From positions 310,001 through 374,000 of IMG/VR virus record IMGVR_UViG_3300034072_000926: a stretch of DNA of 64,000 bases. One strand, written 5' to 3'. The position numbers were made by a program, and so were the translations under genes. Below the pieces are notes generated by a model. It worked only from the letters and a program-made list of their open reading frames with translations. It was not told the origin of the DNA and made no database searches. Below, in pieces: positions 2,476 to 17,477 of this stretch (position 1 is its first letter; each line of letters starts with the position of its first letter).

Positions 2476-2675
2476 GCCTTCCAACTTTCTCAAAGATTTG
2501 GCCTCATGTCGTCAGGGTTCAGACTGAATTGAAGGACGATGCTTGGCTGTGGATCCAGCAATATTGCTGGGATAGTGATATTCCAGGCTATGACATCTTC
2601 ACCTCATTCAGCAATACTGAATTTGGCTTCAAAGACCCCAAACTAGCAATGGAATTCAAGCTCAGGTTTGGCTAA
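2472..2675 (+). CDS. FKLxW-motif array protein
   Basis: Ends FKDPKLAMEFKLRFG; ATGA overlap. Confidence 0.8.
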   Translation: MSLPTFSKIWPHVVRVQTELKDDAWLWIQQYCWDSDIPGYDIFTSFSNTEFGFKDPKLAMEFKLRFG

Positions 2676-2678
2676 ATA
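2673..2678 (+). promoter_or_regulatory. T4-like late promoter motif TAAATA
   Basis: Overlaps upstream TAA stop; followed by AGGAGG and ATG 2697. Confidence 0.5.
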
Positions 2679-2696
2679 CCTCTAGGAGGTATTCAT

Positions 2697-2969
2697 ATGT
2701 CCAAACAATTGAATCTCAAGAAGCAGCTAATCGACCAGGGTTCTCACGCTGGTGCAGCGATGGTTGCGCTTTCCCCACTTATTGCAAGTCCTTCGGTGTT
2801 TACCGCAGCAATTGCTGGCTTTGGTCTAGGCTTGGTTCGCGAAGTCACATCGCGAGGAACTCCTACCAAGTTGAGCAATTTTGTTGATACATTTAAGTCT
2901 CCATGGTCTTGCCTGGATATGTCTTTCTGGACACTAGGCGCTGTTTTGGCCTGGAGCATCTTCAACTAA
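2697..2969 (+). CDS. Small hydrophobic membrane protein (possible holin-like)
   Basis: Hydrophobic Gly/Ala-rich segments; late motif and strong RBS; lacks the array motif. Confidence 0.6.
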   Translation: MSKQLNLKKQLIDQGSHAGAAMVALSPLIASPSVFTAAIAGFGLGLVREVTSRGTPTKLSNFVDTFKSPWSCLDMSFWTLGAVLAWSIFN

Positions 2970-2970
2970 C

Positions 2971-3285
2971 GTGGATCGTCACGTTAGGCACTTAGAACCA
3001 TATTATCTGCAAAAGCAGAGTCTGCTTTTGCAATATCCACTTGTTTTGACTTTAGAGCAAGTGGATAGCATTACAGCCATATCCAATTGGATTGCCGGCG
3101 TTCACATTGATTGTAGGTGGCACGCCTTCCTCTTCAGGAACTTCGGCTTCGAAATTGGATATGACTTCTTCTTTCGTCAGCCTGGAGATGCCTCCCTATT
3201 CAAACTCGCTTGGGGAGGAATCATAGACGATAACATGCCTCCTATCCGTTCTGGATTCTTCCTCGGAGAGCAATGGACTCCTTGA
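2971..3285 (+). CDS. FKLxW-motif array protein
   Basis: FFRQPGDASLFKLAWGG. Confidence 0.75.
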   Translation: MDRHVRHLEPYYLQKQSLLLQYPLVLTLEQVDSITAISNWIAGVHIDCRWHAFLFRNFGFEIGYDFFFRQPGDASLFKLAWGGIIDDNMPPIRSGFFLGEQWTP

Positions 3286-3309
3286 CAAAAGGTTACTTTC
3301 TGCTACATT
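3282..3309 (+). promoter_or_regulatory. Sigma70-type promoter, probably leaderless transcript
   Basis: TTGAC(contains upstream TGA stop)-N17-TACATT, ATG 6 nt later. Confidence 0.65.
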
Positions 3310-3315
3310 GCGGTT

Positions 3316-3585
3316 ATGAAACCGATCGAGTCAAAATATAGAAAATTTCCTTTTGCCTTGGTATTACCCGACCTTATGCCTGTAGGACATGAGTCTCGTC
3401 ACATCGCAATCAAGGAATGGACCGATGCTCTCGATCTGGCTTTCAACACCCATTACGTCTGCTTTGAAGTTCAGAAGAGAGTTCAGTATCGGATAATCTC
3501 TCTCCACTGTTGGGCTTTTAGCGAAAAATGGATGTCACTCCAATTTAAGTTGAAGTTCGGTGGATGGTCGGATACAAATTCATAA
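3316..3585 (+). CDS. FKLxW-motif array protein
   Basis: FSEKWMSLQFKLKFGG. Confidence 0.75.
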   Translation: MKPIESKYRKFPFALVLPDLMPVGHESRHIAIKEWTDALDLAFNTHYVCFEVQKRVQYRIISLHCWAFSEKWMSLQFKLKFGGWSDTNS

Positions 3586-4055
3586 TTGATGGTCGCCCTC
3601 ATGCGACTTTCAACTGGTTCGATGGCGAAGTCAAGATGCAAAGCGCCCTACAGGACTGGTTGAATAGACATCGTTGCTGGGATGGAGCAGATCGAGGCTG
3701 GATGGGATGGACTGATCCATTGCAACTCCGTCCTCTCTGTAACTATAGCCAGATCGATAATACCTGGTTGGTTTTTGATTGGAATCATATCCATATCGGA
3801 AAAGCCTTTCGTGAGCGTTTCTCAAAATGGCGGGAAAGCATGGCTCATGAAGTTCGCTCTCATATTCCCTCTACGAGAACCGGCGAGCAAATTCTCGATC
3901 ATCATAGCAACTGGCTTCTTGCATTGTGTCAAATCGAAGGCCATGACTGGTCCAGGGCCCCATGTGAAAAATCATTTACGGATGATGACAATTGGGTGTA
4001 TAGCTTTGCTTCGAAGAAAGTCGCAGCGGCTTTCAAGATTGTCTTTGGAGTCTAG
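3564..4055 (+). CDS. FKLxW-motif array protein (probably two tandem domains)
   Basis: Internal FDWNHIHIGKAFRERF and terminal FASKKVAAAFKIVFGV. Confidence 0.75.
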   Translation: MVGYKFIIDGRPHATFNWFDGEVKMQSALQDWLNRHRCWDGADRGWMGWTDPLQLRPLCNYSQIDNTWLVFDWNHIHIGKAFRERFSKWRESMAHEVRSHIPSTRTGEQILDHHSNWLLALCQIEGHDWSRAPCEKSFTDDDNWVYSFASKKVAAAFKIVFGV

Positions 4056-4349
4056 ATGTTCAAGTCCCTGAAAGGCTTTGCCGATGATACTAAGCTTGGA
4101 ATGGGACTCCACGTGGATCTATTGCCTGCTGAATATCTCGCAATTGCCAAACGTGAGGATATAGGTCAGACTCCTTTTGCCGATACCCCTGCTTTGATTC
4201 GCGACCATCTGAAAAATTGGTGCGCAGATAATTCTCGCGGTCGATGGAAGTATTCTGACATCAACGTCGATAATCATTTGGCATTCCGCTTTGTCTTCCA
4301 GAAGAAGAGCGAAGCTGTTCGCTTCAAGCTCATATGGGGTGGCAAATGA
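4056..4349 (+). CDS. FKLxW-motif array protein
   Basis: FQKKSEAVRFKLIWGGK. Confidence 0.8.
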   Translation: MFKSLKGFADDTKLGMGLHVDLLPAEYLAIAKREDIGQTPFADTPALIRDHLKNWCADNSRGRWKYSDINVDNHLAFRFVFQKKSEAVRFKLIWGGK

Positions 4350-4546
4350 TCTTCCCTTATATGGTTAGAGTTCCTGATGAACGTGATCCCCGCAATGGTC
4401 ATGATACCATCGAATGGCTAAAAGAGCGCGGTAAGAATCCCGGTAAACATTATGACTTCCATATGCACGGCGGTCAATCGGGATATACGAGCTTCTGGTT
4501 TAAGAGCCGAACGATTGCTCGCTGGGTCGCGTTAGTCTGGACCTGA
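4346..4546 (+). CDS. FKLxW-motif array protein (divergent)
   Basis: FKSRTIARWVALVWT; ATGA overlap start 4346. Confidence 0.7.
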   Translation: MIFPYMVRVPDERDPRNGHDTIEWLKERGKNPGKHYDFHMHGGQSGYTSFWFKSRTIARWVALVWT

Positions 4547-4606
4547 TTTCTATTTTGCAAATTCTACCCTAACTCTGTTAATCCTTTTGGGTTAACGGAG
4601 GTCCTA

Positions 4607-4795
4607 GTGTTTGATCATTCAGTGTTTGTTACTAGCAATTCTCACAATATCAAACTCTTGAAGCAAATGAATTTGAAATTGGGTCGAGATTTCCGTTCCG
4701 AAAAAGGAGCGGTAGCTGCTGGTCGTCCCAATCAATTGCGTCTGCTATTCAAAGACAAAGATCAGGCAATGATCTTCAAGCTAAAGAGCAAATGA
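4607..4795 (+). CDS. FKLxW-motif array protein
   Basis: FKDKDQAMIFKLKSK; GGAGG RBS. Confidence 0.75.
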   Translation: MFDHSVFVTSNSHNIKLLKQMNLKLGRDFRSEKGAVAAGRPNQLRLLFKDKDQAMIFKLKSK

Positions 4796-5037
4796 CCCAT
4801 TACGTTTGGTTTGAAATGCCTGATGGGGTATTTGGTCCCAAGACCCTAGTTGTCAGGGGAGACATAGATGAATGGATTCTTATAAATGATCCACTCAACA
4901 CTATACAATTCAACTTCTTCTCAAAAGATAAGAGAACGCCAGTATTCTATACTAAGGATCTGTCAGACCTTAAATTCATGCGGTTCAAATTCGATTGCCT
5001 GAAAATGGCTCGTAGATTTGCCATAACATTTGTCTGA
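4792..5037 (+). CDS. FKLxW-motif array protein
   Basis: FDCLKMARRFAITFV; ATGA overlap. Confidence 0.7.
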   Translation: MTHYVWFEMPDGVFGPKTLVVRGDIDEWILINDPLNTIQFNFFSKDKRTPVFYTKDLSDLKFMRFKFDCLKMARRFAITFV

Positions 5038-5048
5038 TAAATTAACGT

Positions 5049-5279
5049 ATGGAAGAGATTTTCGTACGCACTCGCAAGCTCAGTATGACACAGCTTCTTG
5101 AAGTGTCTGCATGGTTGAAAGAACACCTAACTGGTTCGGCATCTATCCGACATGCTGATCCTACGATCTATATTCAGCAATATTGCGCTGAAATGGATTC
5201 AGGCAAAAGGATCCATAGGATCAAGGTCCGATTTTTCAACGAGACTGACGCTAGACGCTTCTTAATGGTTTGGGGTTGA
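5049..5279 (+). CDS. FKLxW-motif array protein
   Basis: FFNETDARRFLMVWG. Confidence 0.75.
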   Translation: MEEIFVRTRKLSMTQLLEVSAWLKEHLTGSASIRHADPTIYIQQYCAEMDSGKRIHRIKVRFFNETDARRFLMVWG

Positions 5280-5303
5280 CAAATCACCACTTTATGCTAG
5301 ACA
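5276..5303 (+). promoter_or_regulatory. Sigma70-type promoter
   Basis: TTGAC(contains upstream TGA stop)-N17-TAGACA. Confidence 0.6.
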
Positions 5304-5322
5304 GTAGCATAAGGAGGTGCAA

Positions 5323-5571
5323 ATGAATCAACTGCCAGATATTGAAGACCTGTTTCCCAACCTCGTTCGCGTCAAGCATAACGGGGATGCGTCCGGTGTT
5401 GCACTGAAGATTATGAAGTGGCTTGAAGGCCGTTCCATCATGATCCACAAGGACTTCTATCTGGATATGCAGACTGATTCAGAACGCATCGAGGTCCGCT
5501 TCCGCAAAAAGAAGCCCGCCAAGCTGTTCAAGGAAAACAAGAAAGCAATCCGCGATGAAGTCGAAGGTTGA
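5323..5571 (+). CDS. FKLxW-motif array protein (divergent)
   Basis: EVRFRKKKPAKLFKENK; AAGGAGG RBS supports ATG 5323. Confidence 0.7.
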   Translation: MNQLPDIEDLFPNLVRVKHNGDASGVALKIMKWLEGRSIMIHKDFYLDMQTDSERIEVRFRKKKPAKLFKENKKAIRDEVEG

Positions 5572-5851
5572 TCCTCTCGTCGAGCATGGTTTCAAGATTT
5601 TCATTCCCTACTCGAATACCCGTGCGTTCGAGACTCGTAAACTCACGCACACTGGTGGCAAATACAGCGATCGGAAATATTCCTATGAGCGGGATAATGT
5701 GCCTTCCAAAGAGCTGTCGGCTTGGCTGAAGGAACAGTGCGGGACTCATGGTGTTCTGTGGCTTTGTAAGAAGACCAGTGAGGGCTTCAACATATACTTC
5801 GCGCGCAAAGATGTTGCTATGTTTGCCAAGCTCACGTGGGGCGGGGTGTGA
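5555..5851 (+). CDS. FKLxW-motif array protein
   Basis: FARKDVAMFAKLTWGGV. Confidence 0.75.
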   Translation: MKSKVDPLVEHGFKIFIPYSNTRAFETRKLTHTGGKYSDRKYSYERDNVPSKELSAWLKEQCGTHGVLWLCKKTSEGFNIYFARKDVAMFAKLTWGGV

Positions 5852-6132
5852 CTCATATCTGCATAAAGGCAACCGACGACATCTATGACGGTTTCGGATT
5901 GCGCCTAGAGATCCACGACTGGCTGACAGAAAATGTCGGCTGGGCGGCAAGCGATATGACTGATTATACTTGGGGTAAGAAAGTCGGATATTATGTGCGC
6001 CCATCTGAGAGCGCACTTAATCCGATGTATCAGTCCTCAGGGGATAGACAAACCGGTGGAAATTATCTACACTTCTTGTTCAAAGATCCCGCAAAAGCAA
6101 TGTTGTTCAAACTTAGATGGGGTGGTAAATGA
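5848..6132 (+). CDS. FKLxW-motif array protein
   Basis: FKDPAKAMLFKLRWGGK; GTGA overlap. Confidence 0.8.
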   Translation: MTHICIKATDDIYDGFGLRLEIHDWLTENVGWAASDMTDYTWGKKVGYYVRPSESALNPMYQSSGDRQTGGNYLHFLFKDPAKAMLFKLRWGGK

Positions 6133-6383
6133 CCAATAAGGAAAAGGCCCTCGCCGCTCTGCTCTATGTAAGCCTGATCAAATGGGCCGAGTCGACCATT
6201 GATGTCCTGGAGCGAGTTCGTGCAACTGGCGTCCATGACGATATGATCGATGATCTGATCCACAACGTCAATGACCTCATTGATAAGAAGCTGGCCGAGC
6301 ATCATGACTCTGATGATGTCATGGACGAGATCGAAAAGGTCAATGCCCATATAGTGAAGATGAAAGCTGTCTATGGCGTTTGA
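6129..6383 (+). CDS. Hypothetical helical protein
   Basis: 84 aa, ATGA overlap, acidic/helical; lacks the array motif. Confidence 0.65.
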   Translation: MTNKEKALAALLYVSLIKWAESTIDVLERVRATGVHDDMIDDLIHNVNDLIDKKLAEHHDSDDVMDEIEKVNAHIVKMKAVYGV

Positions 6384-6714
6384 GTGTATCTGGAATGATG
6401 ATGGCACGGTGACTATCCTTGAGGCATTCTCGGATAATCGCTATGCGGGTTCTCCACCTCAAACTGAGGACGAACGTCATGCAGCTCGTGAGAAGAGAAA
6501 TCGTCAAACTGGCTTCGAGAACCTTCGTGACCTCATGAAGGAAATGCAAGACAAGAAGTGGCAAGCATCTCCTCTCTATCACTGGTTCGAAGACCACTGC
6601 CCTGGCTATAAAGTCTTCCTCTCGCATCCCGCAAACTCGATGCCAAAGGAAGCAGCAAAGATCACATTCGCTGATCCTAAACATGCGATGCATTTCAAGC
6701 TAGTCTGGGCGTGA
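6373..6714 (+). CDS. FKLxW-motif array protein
   Basis: FADPKHAMHFKLVWA. Confidence 0.8.
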   Translation: MAFECIWNDDGTVTILEAFSDNRYAGSPPQTEDERHAAREKRNRQTGFENLRDLMKEMQDKKWQASPLYHWFEDHCPGYKVFLSHPANSMPKEAAKITFADPKHAMHFKLVWA

Positions 6715-6974
6715 TCAAGATCACCAATAATGATTATATCGTAATTGTCGATCGCAGTCTTGCGATTATTCAAACCCCTAGTGCAACCTGTCTTAACAAT
6801 GACATGCTCGATTGGCTAACAGTAAACATTGGTCAGCAATCTATGATGGCATTATCTACATCAAACGATGCTGCATGGTTTATGCGGATATGGGATTTTG
6901 CTGGTGATATGAAACAGGGCTTTTTCTTTAAGACGAGGAAGCATGCCTTGTTATTTGCTGCGCGGTGGCTATGA
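6711..6974 (+). CDS. FKLxW-motif array protein
   Basis: FKTRKHALLFAARWL; GTGA overlap. Confidence 0.75.
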   Translation: MIKITNNDYIVIVDRSLAIIQTPSATCLNNDMLDWLTVNIGQQSMMALSTSNDAAWFMRIWDFAGDMKQGFFFKTRKHALLFAARWL

Positions 6975-7195
6975 CTGAGATCATGGTCCAGTTCGATATA
7001 GTGGCTACGAACAATCTCTGGCGAACTCCTAAGATCCTCCTGAATCCTGATGTCAAGGAATTCCTTGATCGCTATAGAGCAACCTTTGAATACCTACTTG
7101 CCGGAGTCTATACGCCACATACCGAGCAATGGCAAGTTCTCTTCACATTCAGAAACAGAGCAGATGCAATCGCATTCAAATTGACATTCTGCTAA
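6971..7195 (+). CDS. FKLxW-motif array protein
   Basis: FRNRADAIAFKLTFC; ATGA overlap. Confidence 0.8.
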   Translation: MTEIMVQFDIVATNNLWRTPKILLNPDVKEFLDRYRATFEYLLAGVYTPHTEQWQVLFTFRNRADAIAFKLTFC

Positions 7196-7210
7196 CCTAT
7201 CCCACATAAC

Positions 7211-7639
7211 GTGGGAATGAAGATCATCACACCCACCGTCGTTTCCATTTCTGGCACGGGCGAAATCCATACTAATCACACCTTTTGGATTGAAAACGAC
7301 GATGGTAGTCGTTTTTCTGTGGATATTCCAAATCACCCTGCAATCATAGAGCAATTTGTATGGCTGAGTGACAATGACTGTCTTCGTCATCTGAAATCAG
7401 TATCGCCTGTTCTTCAAACCAATAACTATGAAATTCAACATGCGATAGATCATAATACTATGATTGATGAGCATTTTTATCTAGCAAAATCATATAAATC
7501 CAAGACTAGTCCTTTTGATCTACTCAGCCCATATGGTAATAGGGTGGAAATCCCTTCCCCGACTTGGGAAGTCCTTTGGTCATTCTGGTCTAAGGAACAT
7601 GCAATCCTATTCAAGATTGCAGTCGGTGGTTCGATTTGA
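7211..7639 (+). CDS. FKLxW-motif array protein
   Basis: FWSKEHAILFKIAVGG. Confidence 0.75.
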   Translation: MGMKIITPTVVSISGTGEIHTNHTFWIENDDGSRFSVDIPNHPAIIEQFVWLSDNDCLRHLKSVSPVLQTNNYEIQHAIDHNTMIDEHFYLAKSYKSKTSPFDLLSPYGNRVEIPSPTWEVLWSFWSKEHAILFKIAVGGSI

Positions 7640-8028
7640 AAATCTTTCAATACAACACCATGTGGGTCCTTATAGGAGATAAGTCTTCTATCTGGCAACA
7701 TGAAGGATCAGTTTCTCGAAAGCCTGAGCTTAAACCTGTCCTGGCCGAGTGGCTTCGTCTAGCATACCCTGATCAGTGGACGACTGTTAACACCTCTAAA
7801 CGAGGTAAATTAATCTCTAGGAACATGAGAGTTCTGAGGGCTTTTAAGCTTCGCTGGGAAGACACGCCAGAGACGACTTTCAGAGCTATAGACACAAGTG
7901 CATTCTATGCACCATATATTCCCTTGCAGATGGTGTCTGCAAATCATCTTCCACCGCCCAAGTTCTTGACAAGATACGACTATTCCTATACCAGTCCTAC
8001 AAGCCCGCTAAAGCCCGACAATTCCTGA
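7636..8028 (+). CDS. FKLxW-motif array protein with C-terminal extension
   Basis: Internal LRAFKLRWED; TTGA overlap. Confidence 0.6.
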   Translation: MKIFQYNTMWVLIGDKSSIWQHEGSVSRKPELKPVLAEWLRLAYPDQWTTVNTSKRGKLISRNMRVLRAFKLRWEDTPETTFRAIDTSAFYAPYIPLQMVSANHLPPPKFLTRYDYSYTSPTSPLKPDNS

Positions 8029-8104
8029 GGGTGTCTGCGGTGCTAACAGGACTTATAGACGCTCATAGGGAGCCGTAGGGCATCTGAGGGTATAGGAAAG
8101 AGTT

Positions 8105-8329
8105 ATGGCACTAGGTGATCGTTATTATAGCGTTGAAGTGCCAAGAGACAATGTCTTGGACGTTGACGGCGACTATTATCGTCCACAATATACTCTTCAC
8201 CGCAAGGTAAAAGACTGGGCCGATGATTATGATATTGATCTCGACTGGTCCTTCGATGATCTCGGCAATGTCTGGTTCGAATTCGATAACCGCGGGGTAG
8301 CGGCTATCTTCCTCCTAAACTGGGCTTGA
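8105..8329 (+). CDS. FKLxW-motif array protein
   Basis: FDNRGVAAIFLLNWA. Confidence 0.75.
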   Translation: MALGDRYYSVEVPRDNVLDVDGDYYRPQYTLHRKVKDWADDYDIDLDWSFDDLGNVWFEFDNRGVAAIFLLNWA

Positions 8330-8353
8330 CATCTAGGCATAATGCCTTAGTCT
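8326..8353 (+). promoter_or_regulatory. Sigma70-type promoter, probably leaderless transcript
   Basis: TTGAC(contains upstream TGA stop)-N17-TAGTCT, ATG 6 nt later. Confidence 0.65.
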
Positions 8354-8359
8354 GCTGAT

Positions 8360-8689
8360 ATGAAATCCGCAGGCACTTATTTTGGATCACATCTACTGGT
8401 TCCCGGTCCGCCCCTAGCTGATTGGGCTGCATCCACGTATGCCTTGATGCAGGATGACTTCGTTGAATGGCTGCGAGAAAACGTAGGCAATGGAGTTGCG
8501 GCTCCCCGAAAGAGCATGGACGACTTCTCTGACTGGTTCTGGCTCGATAATCGGCGTTCAACTCTTGATACGGCTAAATGGCAGAAAAACGGCTTCGTGC
8601 TAGTCTTTCGAGACTCACGCAAAGCCGTTTTCACTAAGATGATATGGGGTGGACGAGACCACCCGTTCTTACTTGACGAGACCGGGTAG
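8360..8689 (+). CDS. FKLxW-motif array protein
   Basis: FRDSRKAVFTKMIWGG. Confidence 0.75.
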   Translation: MKSAGTYFGSHLLVPGPPLADWAASTYALMQDDFVEWLRENVGNGVAAPRKSMDDFSDWFWLDNRRSTLDTAKWQKNGFVLVFRDSRKAVFTKMIWGGRDHPFLLDETG

Positions 8690-9109
8690 GTAACGTCCAC
8701 CCTGCGGTGGCAAGGTCAGAACCTGCTGGCGATTCGAGATGCCGGTCCTTAGGCCGAAACCAATGTGAACCCAACGACGTTTCTCATGAATGAGTTGGTC
8801 AAACTTCATACCAGCAGCAATGAGCTTGGCGCAGATTTCGTATGGAGTGCCGAACTTAGGCGACACAAAGTCAACAGCAAAGCCGTATGAGTGAGCCGAA
8901 GTCGTTACACCACCGACTGCACGATTAACAGCATCGCTCCTGTAGGCCGAGTTGATCTGAATTGGGGTGCCAAGAATCTGACGAACCTTCTCCATCTGTT
9001 GAGCAGTATAGTTTAAGTTCTGTAGAAGCTGACCAGTTGGGATATTGGGAATACCAGTCGAAGTGGTAGTCATTTCTGCAAGGGAGAAATGTGGTGTTAG
9101 CTGAGTCAT
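8669..9109 (-). CDS. Peptidase M15 family (Zn D-Ala-D-Ala peptidase fold) cell-wall hydrolase, probable endolysin
   Basis: LTPHFSLAEM...INSAYRS..VNRAVGG...SAHSYGFAVDF...WVHIG (Zn ligands H-x6-D...H); GGAGG RBS; TAAGTA at 9129-9134. Confidence 0.9.
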   Translation of the reverse strand: MTQLTPHFSLAEMTTTSTGIPNIPTGQLLQNLNYTAQQMEKVRQILGTPIQINSAYRSDAVNRAVGGVTTSAHSYGFAVDFVSPKFGTPYEICAKLIAAGMKFDQLIHEKRRWVHIGFGLRTGISNRQQVLTLPPQGGRYLPGLVK

Positions 9110-9128
9110 AGTCGATCCTCCTTCACCC

Positions 9129-9144
9129 TACTTATCAGTAAATA
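9129..9144. promoter_or_regulatory. Back-to-back late promoter motifs (TAAGTA minus, TAAATA plus)
   Basis: tactta 9129-9134 and taaata 9139-9144 between divergent genes. Confidence 0.5.
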
Positions 9145-9148
9145 GGAG

Positions 9149-9385
9149 GTGGAAAGTGATTTGTTTTCTCCTTTATTCGATGAGCGTCCTTATCGAGTAA
9201 CTTTGCCTCAGGTCATCCACGCTCATCAGCATTATCAGGTTCGACTTTTTCTACTCGATCTCAAGTGGGAAGAATATCAGGACTGGATGATCTGTCCCTA
9301 TACCTATACGGTTGCAGGACAATATGAGGTGTGGTTTAAAGATATTGGCAAAGCCACCTACTTTAAGCTATCCTTTGTCCTATGA
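9149..9385 (+). CDS. FKLxW-motif array protein
   Basis: FKDIGKATYFKLSFVL. Confidence 0.75.
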   Translation: MESDLFSPLFDERPYRVTLPQVIHAHQHYQVRLFLLDLKWEEYQDWMICPYTYTVAGQYEVWFKDIGKATYFKLSFVL

Positions 9386-9609
9386 CACACATGATAAGCT
9401 ATCCTTTGATCTGTGATAATGACATGGACTTCTGTGTCGAGTCATATAATCTCAAGAACGAAATAGCAGCCCACTTCGAAGTGCCTGCTCGTTTTGAGAC
9501 TGAGCATTATGTGATCAAGTGCGGAAGGGAATATGACAAGTTCTACTTCGACGTTTATTTCCCAGATAAGGAAAAGGCTCTCATGTTCAAATTGGCATTT
9601 ATCCGATGA
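9382..9609 (+). CDS. FKLxW-motif array protein
   Basis: FPDKEKALMFKLAFIR; ATGA overlap. Confidence 0.8.
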   Translation: MTHMISYPLICDNDMDFCVESYNLKNEIAAHFEVPARFETEHYVIKCGREYDKFYFDVYFPDKEKALMFKLAFIR

Positions 9610-9851
9610 AGACCGTTCGCATCTCTTATAACTATGAACCGCCTGAACATGACGATTTATTCGTCAGGGCACATCTTGTTGAACAAGCAGACAAGAAGAT
9701 CAGGATCATTACGAGGACGTTCGAGACGTTCACGGAAATGAAGCTAGACCCCGATAGTTACGAGGTCAGACTCGGGGACGAGTGTTTGGAGATTACCTTC
9801 ACCAAGCTCTCTGATGCACTCTTGTTCAAGCTCACGTTTCGATCTGTGTAA
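9606..9851 (+). CDS. FKLxW-motif array protein (last of plus arm)
   Basis: FTKLSDALLFKLTFRSV; ATGA overlap. Confidence 0.8.
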   Translation: MKTVRISYNYEPPEHDDLFVRAHLVEQADKKIRIITRTFETFTEMKLDPDSYEVRLGDECLEITFTKLSDALLFKLTFRSV

Positions 9852-10133
9852 CATCCAATATCGAGATTCATATTGGGCAACGAGTTCTTCTCGTTCAAGC
9901 GTGTCGAAGGCACGAATCAAGAGATCATGAAAGCAAGCCTTGAAATGAAGGGCGTATCGTCTTGGTAAGACGACGGTGTAGAACTCCTGCCCCTTACGCT
10001 CCGATTGGCTGACATGATAATCCCAACCTTGCTCCAAGCCATACATGTCAAAAATCTTCTTAATCACGACATGAAAGGTTACCCCGCGTTTCGTGAAGTT
10101 CAGGAATGATTCGTTGACTTCTATGCCGATCAA
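9744..10133 (-). CDS. FKLxW-motif array protein (divergent, extended; last of minus arm)
   Basis: YALHFKACF followed by a tail overlapping the convergent gene; TTGA overlap start. Confidence 0.6.
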   Translation of the reverse strand: MIGIEVNESFLNFTKRGVTFHVVIKKIFDMYGLEQGWDYHVSQSERKGQEFYTVVLPRRYALHFKACFHDLLIRAFDTLEREELVAQYESRYWMLHRSKRELEQECIRELGEGNLQTLVPESDLVTIGV

Positions 10134-10432
10134 TTGCCACCCCACAAGGTCTTGAAATAGACGGCGTGCTTTGGATCTCTGAACCAGAGCGTTAATGGAT
10201 ATTCATCCTCTTTGAGCATTTTGTCAAAGTCAATGGCCCAACCCCATGGATCTCCACTCTCGATGAAATCCTCATGGGTATTGTCAGACGACCACCAACG
10301 ACATTCATCATCCTCGGGCAATATGCCAGCGATCTTGATAAGATGTTCTCGAGCGTCTGGACGAAGCTCTATGACTGAACCCCAGATTGCCACCTTACCG
10401 GGTCGGAGTGAGAAACTATAGATCATCACCAT
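10130..10432 (-). CDS. FKLxW-motif array protein
   Basis: FRDPKHAVYFKTLWGGN. Confidence 0.8.
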   Translation of the reverse strand: MVMIYSFSLRPGKVAIWGSVIELRPDAREHLIKIAGILPEDDECRWWSSDNTHEDFIESGDPWGWAIDFDKMLKEDEYPLTLWFRDPKHAVYFKTLWGGN

Positions 10433-10803
10433 GTCAATTTGAAATGAACTGCCTCCATCTTGTTCAGGAAACCAACGAACCAGCCAAGCTCGTCATTCTG
10501 TTGATCACGATAGAACGCATACTGGTAGCCGTTTGCTGTAATCCAGTCGTGGATTGGACGAATCAGGCGATAGTTCAATCCACCCGCTTTGAAGGTAACA
10601 TAGTCCTTTTCTACTACCTGTGATAATCCATCTTTGATCCAAGGAACCATTTCGATATTCAGAGGTTCAGGTGGCATACTGCTACGTCGAATAAGACTGA
10701 TATGGTCGTCAAAATTGGCAACTTTTACCCAATAGATCACAGGGAAACGACAGCCGATCCCGTCTTTTGTCTTATAGGTAATTGGAGCCGTGATATCTTT
10801 CAT
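10426..10803 (-). CDS. FKLxW-motif array protein
   Basis: FLNKMEAVHFKLTW; start moved to ATG 10803, 7 nt after a -10 box. Confidence 0.75.
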   Translation of the reverse strand: MKDITAPITYKTKDGIGCRFPVIYWVKVANFDDHISLIRRSSMPPEPLNIEMVPWIKDGLSQVVEKDYVTFKAGGLNYRLIRPIHDWITANGYQYAFYRDQQNDELGWFVGFLNKMEAVHFKLTW

Positions 10804-10809
10804 ACCACA

Positions 10810-10837
10810 TTCATACGACCTTTTACCCAAATGTCAA
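10810..10837 (-). promoter_or_regulatory. Sigma70-type promoter built on an orphan KLT codon run
   Basis: TTGAC-N17-TATGAA. Confidence 0.55.
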
Positions 10838-10855
10838 CTTGAATAGCATCCCATT

Positions 10856-11101
10856 CTAGAGCCATGCTAGGACAAACCGCATAGAATCAATCCTGTTATG
10901 GATCCTAAGAAAGGTGTATTGACCACATCGTTCACTTAATTGGTATTGGACGCCATTTTCCTCAAACCAATGTTGTAGAGGCGGAGACAATAATATCTCA
11001 TCTGGACCGAAGGCATTGAAGGGATGATTTCTAGGCCGTCTCATAAGTTCTGGGGCACCAAAGCCCCAGATGGGCAATTTTACACTAACACCTAGAGCCA
11101 T
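10856..11101 (-). CDS. FKLxW-motif array protein
   Basis: IHNRIDSMRFVLAWL. Confidence 0.75.
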   Translation of the reverse strand: MALGVSVKLPIWGFGAPELMRRPRNHPFNAFGPDEILLSPPLQHWFEENGVQYQLSERCGQYTFLRIHNRIDSMRFVLAWL

Positions 11102-11373
11102 GATAGTTTGAACAACATAGCGGCATTTGCATCATCCTTATGGAATGCAATACCTGGAACAATACTGTAGCGATTAGGACGATAGTCCAAAATCTCGACG
11201 AAACTAGGTTCAGGTTCGAAGTTGCTCATTCGCAATTGGTTTTGATCGAACCATTCGACTCCCTCTGCGGAAATCCACATAGGCTGGGATGGATCCCAAA
11301 ACGCATGACCCCATGGCAGAGGTATGAAATATGTCTGCATACGTTCTATATAGTAGATTCGGTAGTCAGCCAT
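11092..11373 (-). CDS. FKLxW-motif array protein
   Basis: DANAAMLFKLSWL. Confidence 0.8.
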   Translation of the reverse strand: MADYRIYYIERMQTYFIPLPWGHAFWDPSQPMWISAEGVEWFDQNQLRMSNFEPEPSFVEILDYRPNRYSIVPGIAFHKDDANAAMLFKLSWL

Positions 11374-11680
11374 ATTTCAACTTCAAGAGAGTGGCTTCTG
11401 AATGATCCGAGAAGAAGAAAGCCAATCCACTTACCCTACTAGGTTTGCCATCGCCCCATACCCAATCATAGTAGGGTTCAATGCGAATCAGACTCTTGTA
11501 GGCTATGATCTCTTTGGAGAACTCATCATTGGGCCATACCTCACCAATATGTCGTCCACCTGTTATAATAGATTCGAATCCCATTCTCGATTTCTGGACG
11601 ATTTGCTTTGGCCGAAGATAGAGGTGTTCAAAGACCTCGCTACTTCGAGGTATCTTGACTTCGTATTCCATCACTTCCAC
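11366..11680 (-). CDS. FKLxW-motif array protein
   Basis: FSDHSEATLLKLKYG. Confidence 0.75.
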   Translation of the reverse strand: MEVMEYEVKIPRSSEVFEHLYLRPKQIVQKSRMGFESIITGGRHIGEVWPNDEFSKEIIAYKSLIRIEPYYDWVWGDGKPSRVSGLAFFFSDHSEATLLKLKYG

Positions 11681-12033
11681 GCGAGCTTGAACCGGAGAGC
11701 ATCATCCATGTCAGTGAAGCGGAACTGAACACCTAGGGCACGATAGGGTTTCAGTTCTTCCGGATTCTCTAGAGTGAGATTACCAGGAATGAAAGCCTTC
11801 TCATCGCGATACTTGGGCCAGAGAAAATCGAAGCCATATTTGCCACGACAGTTATCAACTAGCCAAGAGGCCATCTCTGGGGAGATTGCCCAGAGCGCTT
11901 CGCCCCTAATACGGAAGAGAATACTTTCTGCACCTTTACCAGCATCCCGACGAGTAAAGGGACCATCCTTGAATTCAAGGTTCACTCGAATCAAGCTAGG
12001 CGCAACCTCTTCCTTTTTCTTTCGCCACCACAT
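11671..12033 (-). CDS. FKLxW-motif array protein
   Basis: FTDMDDALRFKLAWK; AAGAGG RBS. Confidence 0.8.
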   Translation of the reverse strand: MWWRKKKEEVAPSLIRVNLEFKDGPFTRRDAGKGAESILFRIRGEALWAISPEMASWLVDNCRGKYGFDFLWPKYRDEKAFIPGNLTLENPEELKPYRALGVQFRFTDMDDALRFKLAWK

Positions 12034-12057
12034 ATTTGACCTCTTTTGTTACAAAAA

Positions 12058-12085
12058 TCATAACGCGGTTAACTCACAAGGTCAA
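12058..12085 (-). promoter_or_regulatory. Sigma70-type promoter
   Basis: TTGAC(contains upstream TGA stop)-N17-TTATGA. Confidence 0.55.
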
Positions 12086-12363
12086 GAATTACCGCCCCAA
12101 GTGAGCTTGAAAAGAACTGCGACCTTAGGATTCTTGATAGAAATCCTAACGATGCGCTTTGTCATGTATGTTCGAGGGATGCCCTCAACGAATGTGTCCA
12201 CATAATAGTCACGACCTAGCTTCAATTCATGGTCTTTCAACCATGAACCAACAAACTTCTCCGCAAGAGCACGTCGCTCATTTGCGGTCAATTTGTCATA
12301 CATCTGATTCATGCCATGGTCGAAGTCTCGATAAGCAACAACATCTGGTCGAACTTCTCTCAT
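12082..12363 (-). CDS. FKLxW-motif array protein
   Basis: IKNPKVAVLFKLTWGGNS; ATGA overlap. Confidence 0.8.
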   Translation of the reverse strand: MREVRPDVVAYRDFDHGMNQMYDKLTANERRALAEKFVGSWLKDHELKLGRDYYVDTFVEGIPRTYMTKRIVRISIKNPKVAVLFKLTWGGNS

Positions 12364-12587
12364 GCCCACCTCATCTTAAACAACATCGCGGACTTTCGAT
12401 CTAGGAAACGAAACGATATCTCCCACTCATCGACCGTCCGATTCAAAGTGCAGAAAGAGCGACTACAGGAGATGTTTGAATCACGCAACCAGGAAAAGAT
12501 CTCCTTCCTGACTTGGATACCGCGATTGCCTTTGTTGTCTTCCCACCAGCATCCAGCTTTAGAGAAAGGTATCATGATCTCAATCAT
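12360..12587 (-). CDS. FKLxW-motif array protein
   Basis: FLDRKSAMLFKMRWA; ATGA overlap. Confidence 0.8.
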   Translation of the reverse strand: MIEIMIPFSKAGCWWEDNKGNRGIQVRKEIFSWLRDSNISCSRSFCTLNRTVDEWEISFRFLDRKSAMLFKMRWA

Positions 12588-12877
12588 TCGCCGCCCCACG
12601 TGAGTTTGAACAACATAGCCTTATCCAAGTCCTCGATATCAACAGAGAACTTCTGAGTTTGTGGACTGTCATCCCACAGATACAAAAATCGATACTGGAT
12701 ATCATGGTCCGTCATCCATTGATGAACTTCGTCATTCAAGCCTACGATTGCGTTGATACTGTTCCATTCCTTAGACACCGGCTTGCCATTAAAGATCTGC
12801 GGGCCTCTAGGTAGAACAGGTTGATCACTGTTGAGAACAGTGAACTCGCAGATGGTATAACTGACATCGAAGATCAT
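12584..12877 (-). CDS. FKLxW-motif array protein
   Basis: IEDLDKAMLFKLTWGGE. Confidence 0.8.
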   Translation of the reverse strand: MIFDVSYTICEFTVLNSDQPVLPRGPQIFNGKPVSKEWNSINAIVGLNDEVHQWMTDHDIQYRFLYLWDDSPQTQKFSVDIEDLDKAMLFKLTWGGE

Positions 12878-13125
12878 ACGCCACCCCAGACAAGCTTGAA
12901 CATCATAGCTTCCTCTTTGGTCAAGAAAGCAACCCGAGAATGTTTGAAAGGCATGTTATCGTCTGACATTATGATCTGAGGCCCAGCAAACTGAAAACGA
13001 GCATGATCATCACCAAGCTTCTGACAGTTCTCTTTGATCCACTGCGATACCTCAGTCTTGATTGGAGATGTCGTGGTCCTTGGATATTCGCAAATGTTAC
13101 GATATGGAACTTCAACCCAGATCAT
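12874..13125 (-). CDS. FKLxW-motif array protein
   Basis: FLTKEEAMMFKLVWGGV. Confidence 0.8.
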   Translation of the reverse strand: MIWVEVPYRNICEYPRTTTSPIKTEVSQWIKENCQKLGDDHARFQFAGPQIIMSDDNMPFKHSRVAFLTKEEAMMFKLVWGGV

Positions 13126-13150
13126 TGTCCACCCCAGACAAGCTTGAACA
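12881..13150. repeat. Perfect 22-bp direct repeat at the 3' ends of two adjacent array genes
   Basis: ccaccccagacaagcttgaaca at 12881-12902 and 13129-13150. Confidence 0.9.
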
Positions 13151-13352
13151 ATAGAGCGACTTTGGGATCAGAGAGCGTCACGACACAATCTCGTCCATTA
13201 GTATGGAAATCATGATCCCATCCACTAGGAGTGGCATGGACATCGAGCCACTGATAGAGCGCACTGTTGAACACCTCAACATTTCCCCAAGGGGATTCGT
13301 TGCAGCGTTCTAGCCGATAAGCCAAACTAGCAGGGATAACCACATTGGACAT
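13122..13352 (-). CDS. FKLxW-motif array protein
   Basis: LSDPKVALLFKLVWGGQ. Confidence 0.8.
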   Translation of the reverse strand: MSNVVIPASLAYRLERCNESPWGNVEVFNSALYQWLDVHATPSGWDHDFHTNGRDCVVTLSDPKVALLFKLVWGGQ

Positions 13353-13361
13353 CTGGTTTGC

Positions 13362-13601
13362 TTAACACCACTTTATCTTAAAGTAAATGGCTTCCTTGCG
13401 AGCCGTAGAAGGAAATTCCACATAGAAGGAACCATAGACTTGACCACGCGGGAGAAGCTTTACCTTGTGGAGACCTCGACTCTTGAGCCACTCGGTGATT
13501 TCAGGAATGAAGACATACCCTTCATCTAGAAAGATGGAATGCTTCCTAAAGCTGAACATGCCAACGTCGTATGAATTAACATCAATCCTATACATCACCA
13601 C
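13362..13601 (-). CDS. FKLxW-motif array protein
   Basis: KEAIYFKIKWC. Confidence 0.75.
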   Translation of the reverse strand: MVMYRIDVNSYDVGMFSFRKHSIFLDEGYVFIPEITEWLKSRGLHKVKLLPRGQVYGSFYVEFPSTARKEAIYFKIKWC

Positions 13602-13974
13602 ACCATAAAAGTTTGAAGATCAAAGCGTCATTCTTGTTCGTGAAGGCAATCTCACGAGTAGAGGTTGCACGACGTAGAACTTCTTGGTCAATATTGGGCT
13701 GATTGTTCGTTTTGGCGACCCGAACTTCTCTGAATAGATTCTTTGTCTCTGTGCTCATGAAGATATCCTCCATGGCATGTTTGCGATTGATGACTTCATA
13801 CCATCGTCCAACACAATTAGAGTCTAACCATTCCATAAGCGACTCGGATAAAGGAAAACCGTAGACGTGTGGACGATCATTACTAGCATGCCAACGAAGC
13901 ACAATCTTTGGAAGCATTGGAGTACGATCAAATGCCTTCCGTATCCATCGGAGATCCACAAAGAACATTTCCAT
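13588..13974 (-). CDS. FKLxW-motif array protein
   Basis: FTNKNDALIFKLLWC; TAATG overlap start 13974. Confidence 0.75.
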   Translation of the reverse strand: MEMFFVDLRWIRKAFDRTPMLPKIVLRWHASNDRPHVYGFPLSESLMEWLDSNCVGRWYEVINRKHAMEDIFMSTETKNLFREVRVAKTNNQPNIDQEVLRRATSTREIAFTNKNDALIFKLLWCGDV

Positions 13975-14222
13975 TAGTGTATCCAAGCAAGAACGAAATG
14001 AATGAGACGAATCCGAGTCTTGAAACTGACATAACACCCGCCAGAGAACGGCTCATAGGAGATCAATCCCTTGAAATCATCTAACCACTCATAAGCATAG
14101 ATGGAGACCTGTTTGTCATTAAGCCAGATTCCATATGGTCGTCGGTTGATCTTATGGTCAGCCTCTATGCGACTCTTCCGCCTTACCTGCTCACGCTTGA
14201 TACCCTCTAACAAAGACGTCAT
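13974..14222 (-). CDS. FKLxW-motif array protein
   Basis: FKTRIRLIHFVLAWIH; ATGA overlap. Confidence 0.7.
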   Translation of the reverse strand: MTSLLEGIKREQVRRKSRIEADHKINRRPYGIWLNDKQVSIYAYEWLDDFKGLISYEPFSGGCYVSFKTRIRLIHFVLAWIH

Positions 14223-14500
14223 TTCCACCTCAATGCAAACTTGATCGCATCAACCCGATTCTCGAACGTATATCGAAATGCAACCAATTCACTCTTAACT
14301 GAAACCATCTGACGCCCAGATGGATGAGAACCAGCAGGAGTCTTGATTATGTTCTGATCAATACCACGAACAAAATCATAGATGTCCTCTTCCTCAAACC
14401 AATCCTGAAACATAGATATGATTGTTCGCATATCTCCACGACCTACAACAGCACGTCGTATAGTAGGCGTATCAAGGACAACAGTGTAGGTCATCACCAA
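14219..14500 (-). CDS. FKLxW-motif array protein
   Basis: FENRVDAIKFALRWK. Confidence 0.8.
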   Translation of the reverse strand: MVMTYTVVLDTPTIRRAVVGRGDMRTIISMFQDWFEEEDIYDFVRGIDQNIIKTPAGSHPSGRQMVSVKSELVAFRYTFENRVDAIKFALRWK

Positions 14501-14736
14501 TTCAACCTGAATAGTAGGGCATCCTCACGATCATCAAAACAGAATCGAACACCCATATTGATAAAACGAGCACATTTCCTATCAAAGATGGTCCAACTAT
14601 GAACAGAGTAGGCCGCCCGACTATGGTCCACTAACCATATCTCAACCTCTTTCCTCAAATGAGGAATAGGAACACCGTGGAGGACGAGTTCCTCCATGAC
14701 AGACGTATTGGTCCAGGGGATCTTAACCTCTATCAT
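14494..14736 (-). CDS. FKLxW-motif array protein
   Basis: FDDREDALLFRLNW; start moved to ATG 14736 (MIEVKIPW, like the MIEIMIPF paralogue). Confidence 0.8.
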   Translation of the reverse strand: MIEVKIPWTNTSVMEELVLHGVPIPHLRKEVEIWLVDHSRAAYSVHSWTIFDRKCARFINMGVRFCFDDREDALLFRLNW

Positions 14737-14980
14737 ACGTCCCCCACAAAAGCTTGAACAACATTGCGTGATTCCGATCCTCAAAATGAAAGGTGGTCGA
14801 TTCACGACGAACCCGCCCATAAGCATTCTGCTTATGGCAATCAGTAACCTCATATGGAAACTGACTTTCCGCTAACCATTCCCGAAGGTCAGTCCACCAC
14901 TCTCTATAGCGCATCATATACTCAGCACGACCACCAAAAGGATAAGGATTCATGACTACAACCTGGTAACTCATAACCAC
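14723..14980 (-). CDS. FKLxW-motif array protein
   Basis: FEDRNHAMLFKLLWG. Confidence 0.8.
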   Translation of the reverse strand: MVMSYQVVVMNPYPFGGRAEYMMRYREWWTDLREWLAESQFPYEVTDCHKQNAYGRVRRESTTFHFEDRNHAMLFKLLWGTYDRG

Positions 14981-15186
14981 TCCAGAGTGAACATCATTGC
15001 TTGACCACGAGACTCGAAAACAAAGAACAACACATCCTCATTTGCAGACGTCCCACTCTCCCACTTGAACACAATCCCACGGTCGAGCAACCAATCCTTT
15101 ATCGAACCCGTTCGCGCCGGACAACCCATCCGACGCGCATAAGCAGCTAAGGCTTCCATAGGTCTGACTAAGGCAACTCTATACAT
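14971..15186 (-). CDS. FKLxW-motif array protein (first of minus arm)
   Basis: FESRGQAMMFTLEWL; start uncertain (ATG 15186 or GTG 15222). Confidence 0.7.
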   Translation of the reverse strand: MYRVALVRPMEALAAYARRMGCPARTGSIKDWLLDRGIVFKWESGTSANEDVLFFVFESRGQAMMFTLEWL

Positions 15187-15189
15187 CTC

Positions 15190-15750: not shown

Positions 15751-15751
15751 A

Positions 15752-17466: not shown

Positions 17467-17477
17467 ATTGGTTCTCC

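What the first reader, a model, noticed from the sequence alone, without database searches (positions are those of the whole stretch)
4320..13150. Array gene 3' ends act as a plug-in module: WGG codons give the next gene's Shine-Dalgarno, and identical ends could drive accordion recombination
Seen: many members end TGG GG(T/C) GG(N) NNN TGA with the next start overlapping the stop (4349, 5851, 6132, 10130, 12584, 12874, 13122). The Gly-Gly codons form GGGGTGG/GGCGG 3-5 nt before the next start. Two adjacent, otherwise dissimilar genes share a perfect 22-bp end (12881-12902 = 13129-13150). Inference: the terminus is both a protein motif and an RBS donor, so any member can be placed before any other. 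Recombination between ends would delete, duplicate or swap whole genes.
Basis: partly seen in the sequence, partly recalled or inferred. Interest (0 to 1): 0.6.

Follow-up and report, generated by a model that had tools for sequence, protein, structure and literature searches.

The report
Shared gene ends shuffle phage array
In a 465-kb phage, dozens of small related genes end in the same Trp-Gly-Gly codons; these look like the ribosome-binding site of the next, overlapping gene, and they sit where near-identical strains have lost or gained exactly one whole gene.

Summary
All seven listed genes end TGG GGY GGN NNN TGA with an NTGA start for the next gene, and the 22-bp repeat is exact.

The genes belong to an unannotated small-protein family. 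It has about 90 copies (5.6% of this 465-kb phage) and 778 clusters in metagenomes. FKLxWGG is first of all a conserved protein motif.

The genome uses canonical Shine-Dalgarno sites. The WGG codons form a GAGGTG mimic in the same register, with predicted pairing of -8 to -10 kcal/mol against a genome median of about -6. GG tails go with overlapping starts (odds ratio 7.2, p=0.0006). Family genes with shorter tails use Arg-Trp AGG TGG instead. The RBS role is still only predicted, and many coupled junctions have no such site.

The recombination idea has direct support. The second junction lies inside the Gly-Gly codons. Frames and ATGA overlaps are kept in both.

Long identical ends are the exception: only 1 of 39 adjacent pairs shares more than 11 nt. 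There are no recent duplicates and no concerted evolution, so "accordion" duplication is not supported.

The closest analogue is PeSL-mediated shuffling in T4-type phages.

The parts
2472..9851 (+). Plus-strand array of about 22 small genes. About 20 belong to the FKLxW(GG) family. Gene 6129-6383 does not.
   Evidence: ORFs; family HMM hits; alignment A1
9744..15222 (-). Minus-strand array of about 19 small genes, convergent with the plus-strand array. Gene 9744-10133 is not a clear family member.
4335..4349 (+). End TGG GGT GGC AAA TGA (WGGK). The ATG of the next gene (4346-4546) overlaps the stop.
   Evidence: -9.2 kcal/mol; -9.8, register -2
5837..5851 (+). End TGG GGC GGG GTG TGA (WGGV). 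The GTG start of 5848-6132 overlaps the stop.
6118..6132 (+). End TGG GGT GGT AAA TGA (WGGK). The ATG of 6129-6383 overlaps the stop.
10130..10144 (-). End TGG GGT GGC AAT TGA (WGGN). The TTG start of 9744-10133 overlaps the stop.
13122..13352 (-). Gene Y, ending FKLVWGGQ + ATGA. It has a 63% aa orthologue in relative L002.
12874..13125 (-). Gene X, ending FKLVWGGV + ATGA. It is absent as a precise 248-bp unit from contigs of runs X5 and X6 (joint 12870|13119, 7 nt ATGATCT ambiguous).
12584..12877 (-). Gene Z, ending FKLTWGGE + ATGA. It is absent as a precise 290-bp unit from a contig of run X3 (joint 12590|12881, inside the Gly-Gly codons). That leaves X ending WGGE with the ATGA overlap to gene 12360-12587 intact.
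12881..12902 (-). Copy 1 of the 22-bp identity TGTTCAAGCTTGTCTGGGGTGG (3' end of X).
13129..13150 (-). Copy 2 of the 22-bp identity (3' end of Y).
12360..12371 (-). Alternative SD-bearing end AGG TGG GCA TGA (RWA). Here the Arg-Trp codons give GAGGTGG before the overlapping ATG of 12082-12369.
   Evidence: -10.1; -10.8
8669..9109 (-). Peptidase_M15_3 endolysin-like gene inside the array region. It is not a family member and was used as a synteny anchor.

Best explanation
Window 2.4-15.2 kb is a hyperplastic region of a 465-kb phage. It is built from diverged copies of one small phage protein family with a variable N-terminal part and a conserved alpha-beta-beta-alpha core that ends ...DAMLFKLTWGG.

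WGG is primarily a protein motif. The genes are packed with 4-nt stop/start overlaps (NTGA). One spacer codon follows WGG, so the obligatory run UGGGGNGG lies at -11 to -4 of the next start. In the common GGU form it mimics GAGGUG, with six pairs (one G.U) to the 16S tail, in the same register as this genome's strong Shine-Dalgarno sites. It therefore most likely helps the terminating ribosome, or a new one, start the next gene (inferred).

The same patch, motif codons plus ATGA, is the only nucleotide similarity between neighbouring genes. Rare short-homology or unequal crossovers there remove, add or replace whole genes. They automatically keep the reading frame, the stop, the ribosome site and the start overlap. 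This is shown as presence/absence variants among near-identical strains; the direction of each event and the enzymes involved are not known.
For: Family:
- 92 HMM ORFs cover 26 kb of the genome.
- 778 representatives at 50% clustering reach E<=1e-3, and nearly all end FKLxW(G)(G) plus 0-4 residues.
- The AF2 core has pLDDT 82-95.

SD role:
- AGGAG is enriched 12-fold at -11..-7 of 286 unambiguous starts.
- xGGX junctions have a median of -9.2 kcal/mol, against -5.6 for reference starts and -2.8 for background.
- With the full 16S tail the register is -2..0, equal to the mode of 155 strong reference sites.
- GG tails have overlapping starts in 21 of 25 cases, other tails in 22 of 52 (p=0.0006). 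The direction is the same in two relatives.
- The X residue changes between orthologues (V/L, Q/K, N/M) while NTGA is kept.
- Family genes with W+1 tails use the minor Arg codon AGG before TGG in 7 of 8 cases, against 0 of 8 in GG tails. AGG is 11% of Arg codons genome-wide.
- Intragenic SDs ahead of overlapping starts are the rule in most bacteria, and removing them cut reinitiation in 4 of 5 E. coli pairs (PMC6728339).

Recombination:
- Single contigs join 12870|13119 (X5, and again in X6) and 12590|12881 (X3) with no inserted letters. Bin depths show no residual copy of the missing gene.
- The junction sequences reconstructed from the window keep all frames and overlaps.
- blastn blocks against relative L002 end exactly at 4349, 5851 and 13122.
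- An extra gene in L002 sits between two FKLVWGGK ends.
- Gene 5848-6132 is replaced in L002 but kept in L004 and L069.
Against: - No expression or ribosome data are available.
- Gly codon choice is only weakly shifted. GGT is 13 of 21 against 44% expected; the pooled p of 0.005 is inflated by orthologues. Seven of the nine motif bases are fixed by the peptide, so SD-likeness could be a by-product.
- WGG persists in at least six members with no nearby downstream start.
- 25 other family junctions are overlapped with a median of only -3.3 kcal/mol, so an SD is dispensable for packing.
- The host's 16S tail is assumed, not known.
- Only two strain-level events were seen, in one 5.9-kb stretch, from assembled contigs rather than raw reads. 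Their polarity (loss or gain) is unknown.
- There is no homogenisation of ends, and ends typically share 11 nt or fewer. Crossovers at the motif must therefore be rare. Selection for intact genes could also concentrate surviving junctions at gene ends.
Confidence: 0.62

Rival explanations
1. The motif acts only in the protein. FKLxWGG is a structural cap of the last helix. The G-run is an unavoidable consequence of Trp and Gly codons. Downstream genes are translated by termination-reinitiation at NTGA whatever lies upstream. The gene-unit indels are ordinary illegitimate recombination whose survivors are those that respect gene borders.
For: The motif is conserved across 778 clusters and in fused two-domain proteins. 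It is retained without a downstream start. Coupled junctions exist without SD-like runs. Gly codon bias is weak. There is no concerted evolution.
Against: GG tails are strongly associated with overlapping starts. The mimic sits in exactly the register of the genome's SDs. Shorter tails independently use AGG TGG. Both strain-level junctions fall in the only patches of nucleotide similarity between the genes: 29 of 32 nt and 13 of 15 nt.
Confidence: 0.25
2. The two 'deletions' are assembly artefacts of short-read contigs at repeated ends.
For: All evidence comes from Logan contigs, not raw reads. The joints lie at repeated sequence.
Against: The repeats (22 nt; 4-7 nt at the joints) are shorter than the 31-mers used for these assemblies (my own knowledge of Logan; the tool text only mentions 31-letter words). 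The 12870|13119 joint recurs in two runs of different studies. The joined contigs have the same depth as their flanks, and no contig of the missing gene exists in those runs.
Confidence: 0.05
3. Genes X and Z are recent insertions brought in by an active mobility mechanism, such as a nuclease-driven or cassette-type insertion, rather than lost by homology-driven crossover.
For: Polarity is unknown. Lineage-specific cassettes have no source elsewhere in the genome. The X-Y segment of run X3 is 4.4% diverged against 1.5% or less in its flanks, which suggests import from another lineage.
Against: No nuclease, integrase or attC-like element lies in or beside the arrays. Promoter and terminator scans show no repeated non-coding cassette. 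The junctions are in-register between homologous codons, as expected for crossovers.
Confidence: 0.08

Closest known systems
PeSL (promoter-early stem-loop) cassettes in hyperplastic regions of T4-type phages (Arbiol et al. 2010, PMC2839356; Comeau et al. 2014, PMC4122927)
   Same: A short sequence with an expression function is repeated at the borders of small non-essential ORFs. Insertions, deletions and replacements between close relatives map to it.
   Different: PeSLs are non-coding promoter-plus-terminator units. Here the repeated element is the coding C-terminus of a protein family plus a stop/start overlap, and it would act on translation, not transcription. No promoter or terminator enrichment was found in the array. 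Mini-circles were not tested.
Translational coupling of overlapping gene pairs with an intragenic Shine-Dalgarno in the upstream gene's 3' end (Huber et al. 2019, PMC6728339)
   Same: There is an ATGA-type overlap. An SD-like run lies within 12 nt upstream, inside the upstream coding sequence. Predicted energies pass their 'strong SD' limit of -8.4 kcal/mol for the GGT class.
   Different: The SD-like run is supplied by a conserved peptide motif shared by dozens of paralogues, so it comes ready-made with any family member. Coupling itself was not measured here.
Unequal crossing-over in tandem paralogue arrays, including poxvirus gene accordions (Elde et al. 2012; my own knowledge, not checked in the library)
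   Same: There is gene-unit gain or loss in a tandem array of homologous genes, through crossover between neighbouring copies.
   Different: Accordion copies are near-identical and expand or contract quickly. Here the paralogues are at most 39.5% identical. Homology is confined to about 15-30 nt, and no duplicated copies are seen.
Conserved gene-boundary ('linker') sequences proposed as recombination sites in lambdoid phages (modular evolution theory; my own knowledge)
   Same: Mosaic joints lie at gene borders, where short conserved sequences occur.
   Different: In that case the sequences are non-coding or chance similarities between unrelated genes. Here it is a family-wide coding motif.

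Membership tests
Translationally coupled overlapping gene pair with intragenic SD | Stop and start codons overlap (ATGA, GTGA, TTGA or TAATG) | tested here: met
   17 of 19 xGGX ends genome-wide, including all seven listed ends
Translationally coupled overlapping gene pair with intragenic SD | SD-like run complementary to the 16S 3' tail within about 12 nt upstream of the downstream start, in the usual register | tested here: met
   Energies of -8.1 to -9.8 kcal/mol at register -2..0, equal to the mode of the genome's strong sites. The canonical 16S tail is assumed
Translationally coupled overlapping gene pair with intragenic SD | Downstream translation depends on upstream translation and/or on the SD | not testable with these tools
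   Needs reporter constructs or ribosome profiling
PeSL-type mobile regulatory cassette | Repeated sigma-70-like promoter plus stem-loop terminator between ORFs | tested here: not met
   32 promoter-like sites against 27.7 expected, and 20 terminator-like sites against 14.0 expected (sd 3.5). Genes overlap, so there is no intergenic room
PeSL-type mobile regulatory cassette | Indels and replacements between close relatives are bounded by the repeated element | tested here: met
   Joints at 12870|13119 and 12590|12881. Breaks against L002 at 4349, 5851 and 13122
Gene accordion (recent tandem amplification) | Near-identical tandem copies whose number varies | tested here: not met
   The best paralogue pair is 39.5% aa identical, and nearest paralogues are mostly in other arrays. 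No contig shows a duplicated gene
Concerted evolution / gene conversion of repeat ends | Ends are more alike within a genome than between genomes at synonymous sites | tested here: not met
   42.1% within the genome against 41.8% and 37.2% between genomes. Adjacent pairs 43.1%, distant pairs 42.3%
Any curated protein family (Pfam, PHROGs, NCBIfam, PDB sequences or folds) | Significant profile or fold match | tested here: not met
   Foldseek gives E>=0.19, and VIA-align gives Z<=4.2 to generic alpha/beta folds. The nearest Atlas clusters are viral hypotheticals

The most novel reading that the evidence does not exclude
The C-terminal FKLxWGG codons plus the ATGA overlap act as a coding 'linker' that the phage population exploits. 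Any family member carries its own in-frame stop, the ribosome site and the start overlap for whatever follows, and a short homology patch. Cassettes can therefore be exchanged between co-infecting relatives and expressed at once. This would be a translation-level, protein-coding counterpart of PeSLs or integron cassettes. It would maintain a fast-turning-over arsenal of about 90 small, probably host-directed proteins in a megaphage.
Probability: 0.25. Interest if true: 0.8.

Novelty: new variant of a known kind. Interest (0 to 1): 0.6.

Why it matters
Huge phages carry large blocks of small unknown genes, and how those blocks turn over is poorly understood. This locus offers a concrete, testable mechanism. 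A single conserved peptide-coding patch would guarantee expression of the next gene and also mark the place where whole genes drop in or out without damage. It also flags a large unannotated phage protein family: about 90 copies here and hundreds of clusters in metagenomes. Its rapid turnover between relatives suggests an arms-race role. Finally, it gives three natural haplotypes (Y-X-Z, Y-Z, Y-X) that can be assayed directly.

Tried and rejected
- **Known families and folds.** Pfam, PHROGs, NCBIfam, PDB sequence search, Foldseek (PDB, BFVD), VIA-align wide and ESM Atlas gave no family or fold beyond generic alpha/beta.
- **Known phages.** INPHARED phages gave no match by DNA or by protein.
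- **Junction patterns.** The exact junction sequences of the two variants were not found in IMG/VR or in JGI metagenome contigs. The variants are therefore documented only by Logan contigs.
- **Exact look-up of gene Y's protein.** It returned only the source assembly.
- **Chi-like hotspot idea.** TGGGGTGG occurs 20 times against 13 expected, and 13 of those are family ends. Rejected.
- **Intragenomic shuffling.** Cassettes specific to L002 have no hit below 1e-5 anywhere in this genome.
- **False positive.** P0021 (1250 aa, '11 stretches') is an unrelated repeat protein.
- **Literature.** A search for a described multigene family of this kind in jumbo phages found nothing relevant.
- **Operator conditions.** No alternative genetic code was used. 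Read laying was given 5,901 letters.
Full report
**Where the window lies.** The window is bases 310,001-374,000 of a 465,259-bp virus record that is rated complete. The whole genome was laid in the Python box for scripts. Nothing in the INPHARED phage collection resembles the region, by DNA or by protein.

**Check of the observation.** ORF listing and direct reading confirm a plus-strand run of small genes at about 2472-9851. A convergent minus-strand run lies at about 15222 down to 9744, with an M15 endolysin-like gene (8669-9109, minus) between them.
- All seven cited ends read TGG GG(T/C) GGN NNN TGA.
- In every case the base before TGA completes an ATG (4349, 6132, 12584, 12874, 13122), a GTG (5851) or a TTG (10130). 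Each opens the next ORF.
- The alternative start 13 nt upstream, which ORF listing reports for some of these genes, is not conserved in the orthologue of a relative, whereas the overlap start is.
- The 22-bp identity is exact. The two proteins are otherwise 26% identical over 70 aa.

**What the genes are.** An iterative HMM built from the motif-bearing ORFs finds 92 ORFs in about a dozen arrays across the genome. Together they cover 26 kb, or 5.6% of the genome.
- The family has a variable N-terminal part, a conserved (E/D)W(L/I)xxN helix, two strands, and a last helix ending DAMLFKLTW, often followed by GG.
- AlphaFold2 with the paralogue alignment gives a confident alpha-beta-beta-alpha core (pLDDT 82-95 for residues 50-97) and a disordered N-terminus.
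- No library recognises the family or the fold.
- A profile search of 1.84 billion representatives finds 778 clusters at E<=1e-3. Almost all are proteins of 60-130 aa that end FKLxW, FKLxWG or FKLxWGG plus 0-4 residues. A few are two-domain fusions in which the first domain keeps FGG internally.
- WGG is therefore first of all a conserved peptide motif of a widespread, unannotated phage family.

**The ribosome-site claim: evidence for.**
- This genome uses canonical SD sites. At 286 starts that are unambiguous from ORF geometry, AGGAG is 12-fold enriched and G peaks at -10 and -9.
- In WGG-X-TGA ends the run UGGGGUGG occupies -11 to -4. GGGGUG can pair with 5'-CACCUC-3' of the 16S tail, with one G.U pair.
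- Predicted duplex energies for the 17 overlapped xGGX junctions have a median of -9.2 kcal/mol. Reference starts have -5.6, random sequence -2.8, and 25 overlapped junctions behind other tails -3.3.
- With the full canonical tail, the register of the mimic (-2 to 0) equals the mode of the genome's 155 strong sites.
- GG tails are followed by an overlapping start in 21 of 25 cases, other tails in 22 of 52 (odds ratio 7.2, p=0.0006). The trend is the same in two relatives.
- Overlapping starts follow 19% of 430 long ORFs genome-wide.
- The spacer residue X is free. Its distribution is K, R, Q, E, L, V, N, A, M, and it changes in three of four orthologous pairs. Its last base is never C before TGA (0 of 30).
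- Family genes whose tail is W plus one residue carry Arg before Trp as AGG in 7 of 8 cases, giving GAGGUGG at the same distance. Genes with GG tails never do (0 of 8). AGG is 11% of Arg codons in the genome. Some of these cases are orthologues, so the counts are not fully independent.
- These results fit the general finding that overlapping pairs usually have an SD inside the upstream gene, and that removing it lowers reinitiation in most tested pairs (PMC6728339).

**The ribosome-site claim: evidence against selection for an SD.**
- Seven of the nine motif bases are fixed by Trp and Gly, so the G-run comes with the peptide.
- Wobble choice is only mildly shifted. The first Gly is GGT in 13 of 21 cases against 44% expected.
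- WGG is kept in at least six members with no nearby downstream start.
- Many junctions are coupled without any SD-like run.
- My reading is that the peptide motif came first and that gene packing, with one spacer codon plus NTGA, has been tuned to use it. The function itself is inferred, not shown.

**The recombination claim: negative results.**
- Identical ends are not general. Among 39 adjacent pairs only X/Y exceeds 11 nt of in-register identity.
- Genome-wide, three pairs reach 22 nt or more, against 0.23 expected from synonymous resampling. For adjacent pairs P is about 0.007.
- Synonymous identity in the motif is the same within the genome (42.1%) as between genomes (41.8% and 37.2%), and the same for adjacent and distant pairs. 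The ends are therefore not being homogenised.
- No two paralogues exceed 39.5% identity, and nearest paralogues usually lie in other arrays. There is no recent amplification.

**The recombination claim: positive results from strains.** Twenty public runs hold part of window 11000-15000, and five of them hold half or more of its sampled words. Contigs from four of them were laid on 10000-15900 (5,901 letters). Two clean single-gene differences appeared among strains 95-99% identical to the window.
- In run X5 a 5,070-nt contig passes directly from 12870 to 13119. In run X6, from another study, a 286-nt contig has the same joint.
  - Gene X is absent. Y keeps ...WGGQ, and its ATGA now opens Z (MIFDVSY...).
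  - The joint lies in the 7 nt ATGATCT that follow the 22-nt identity; the whole patch matches at 29 of 32 nt.
- In run X3 an 849-nt contig passes from 12590 to 12881. Gene Z is absent.
  - The joint lies inside the Gly-Gly codons: X's TGG GGT GG is joined to Z's C GAA TGA.
  - X now ends WGGE, and the ATGA opens gene 12360-12587 (MIEIMIP...).
- Bin depths in those runs equal what partial coverage by the joined contigs would give, so no copy of the missing gene is present.
- Run X4 and the source runs keep Y-X-Z.
- The repeats are shorter than the 31-mers of these assemblies (my own knowledge of Logan), and the first joint recurs independently. An assembly artefact is therefore unlikely.
- In run X3 the X-Y segment differs at 27 of 609 positions, against 1.5% or less in its flanks. 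This points to exchange with a more distant lineage.
- The junction sequences themselves were not found in IMG/VR or JGI contigs.

**More distant relatives.** Three relatives carry the same region: L002 (about 70% nt identity), L004 (a 417-kb IMG/VR contig) and L069 (a 123-kb contig).
- The plus-strand array is a collinear backbone of orthologues at 33-84% aa identity, interrupted by whole-gene differences.
  - L002 has an extra gene (10291-10512) between two FKLVWGGK ends, where the window has the 4349 junction.
  - Window genes 4792-5037 and 9382-9851 are extra.
  - Gene 5848-6132 is replaced in L002 by an unrelated family member, although L004 (63%) and L069 (71%) keep the orthologue.
- In the minus-strand array a block of nine genes (10856-13125) is exchanged for eight unrelated members in L002. 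Homology resumes exactly at 13122, the stop/start overlap after Y's WGG.
- blastn blocks also end exactly at 4349 and 5851. At 70% identity the junctions cannot be placed to the base.
- Some indels abut non-WGG ends (FKLKSK, FKLSFVL), so the property belongs to the conserved end plus overlap in general, not to WGG alone.
- Cassettes specific to L002 have no counterpart anywhere in this genome. This argues for exchange with an external pool rather than shuffling within the genome.

**Comparison with known systems.**
- The translation side is an instance of overlapping-pair coupling with an intragenic SD (PMC6728339). The twist is that a family-wide peptide motif supplies the SD.
- The turnover side works like PeSL-mediated modular shuffling in T4-type hyperplastic regions (PMC2839356, PMC4122927). 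It is not a member of that class: there is no promoter-terminator unit, and the repeated element is coding.
- It is not a gene accordion in the poxvirus sense, because there are no near-identical copies.

**Verdict.** I rate it a new variant of known kinds, of moderate to good interest. What remains open is experimental proof of the ribosome-site role, the polarity and frequency of the crossovers, and the function of the family.

Noticed in passing
whole genome G000 (arrays near 50.8-55 kb, 62-65 kb, 110 kb, 177 kb, 217-229 kb, 242-254 kb, 277-295 kb, 312-325 kb, 340 kb, 384 kb, 410 kb, 464 kb): One unannotated small-protein family has about 90 copies, 5.6% of a 465-kb phage genome. It has 778 clusters in metagenomes and no Pfam, PHROG, NCBIfam or PDB match. 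Its function is unknown.
   Followed up: partly
window 12360-12371 (-), and genome ends at 218291, 242243 and 247206: Family genes with a one-residue tail after Trp use the minor Arg codon AGG before TGG. This gives GAGGTGG just upstream of the overlapping start. It is a second way in which these gene ends carry an SD-like run.
   Followed up: partly
window 8647-8664 (+): The best terminator-like hairpin in the region (GGGTGG-ACGAGA-CCACCC, then a T-rich tail) is built from the internal WGG codons of gene 8360-8689. That gene is the last plus-strand gene before the convergent endolysin and has no downstream overlapping gene.
   Followed up: no
window 12881-13489, in contigs of run X3: The X-Y segment of this strain differs at 27 of 609 positions, while flanking contigs differ by 1.5% or less. 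This mosaic patch suggests import from a more distant lineage.
   Followed up: no
window 9606-9851 (+) and 9744-10133 (-): The last plus-strand ORF and the last minus-strand ORF of the two convergent arrays overlap by about 108 nt on opposite strands. Genes 9382-9851 are absent from relative L002, so one of the two gene models may be wrong or recent.
   Followed up: no
proteins P0002, P0003, P0008, P0011, P0018 (metagenomic hits): These are two-domain fusions of the family. In P0003 the first domain keeps FKLTFGG internally and is followed after a few residues by Met and the second domain, as if a stop/start overlap had been lost.
   Followed up: no
window 16249-20567 (-): Two large genes (405 aa, with phage-tail-repeat-like Asn/Thr-rich repeats, PF12789 on record; and 1029 aa) lie upstream of the minus-strand array in the same orientation. 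A gap of about 530 bp (15222-15750) separates them from it and may hold the array's promoter.
   Followed up: no
window 6129-6383 (+): A helical 84-aa protein that is not a family member sits inside the plus-strand array. It is conserved in L002 (65%) and is coupled by ATGA to the preceding WGGK gene.
   Followed up: no
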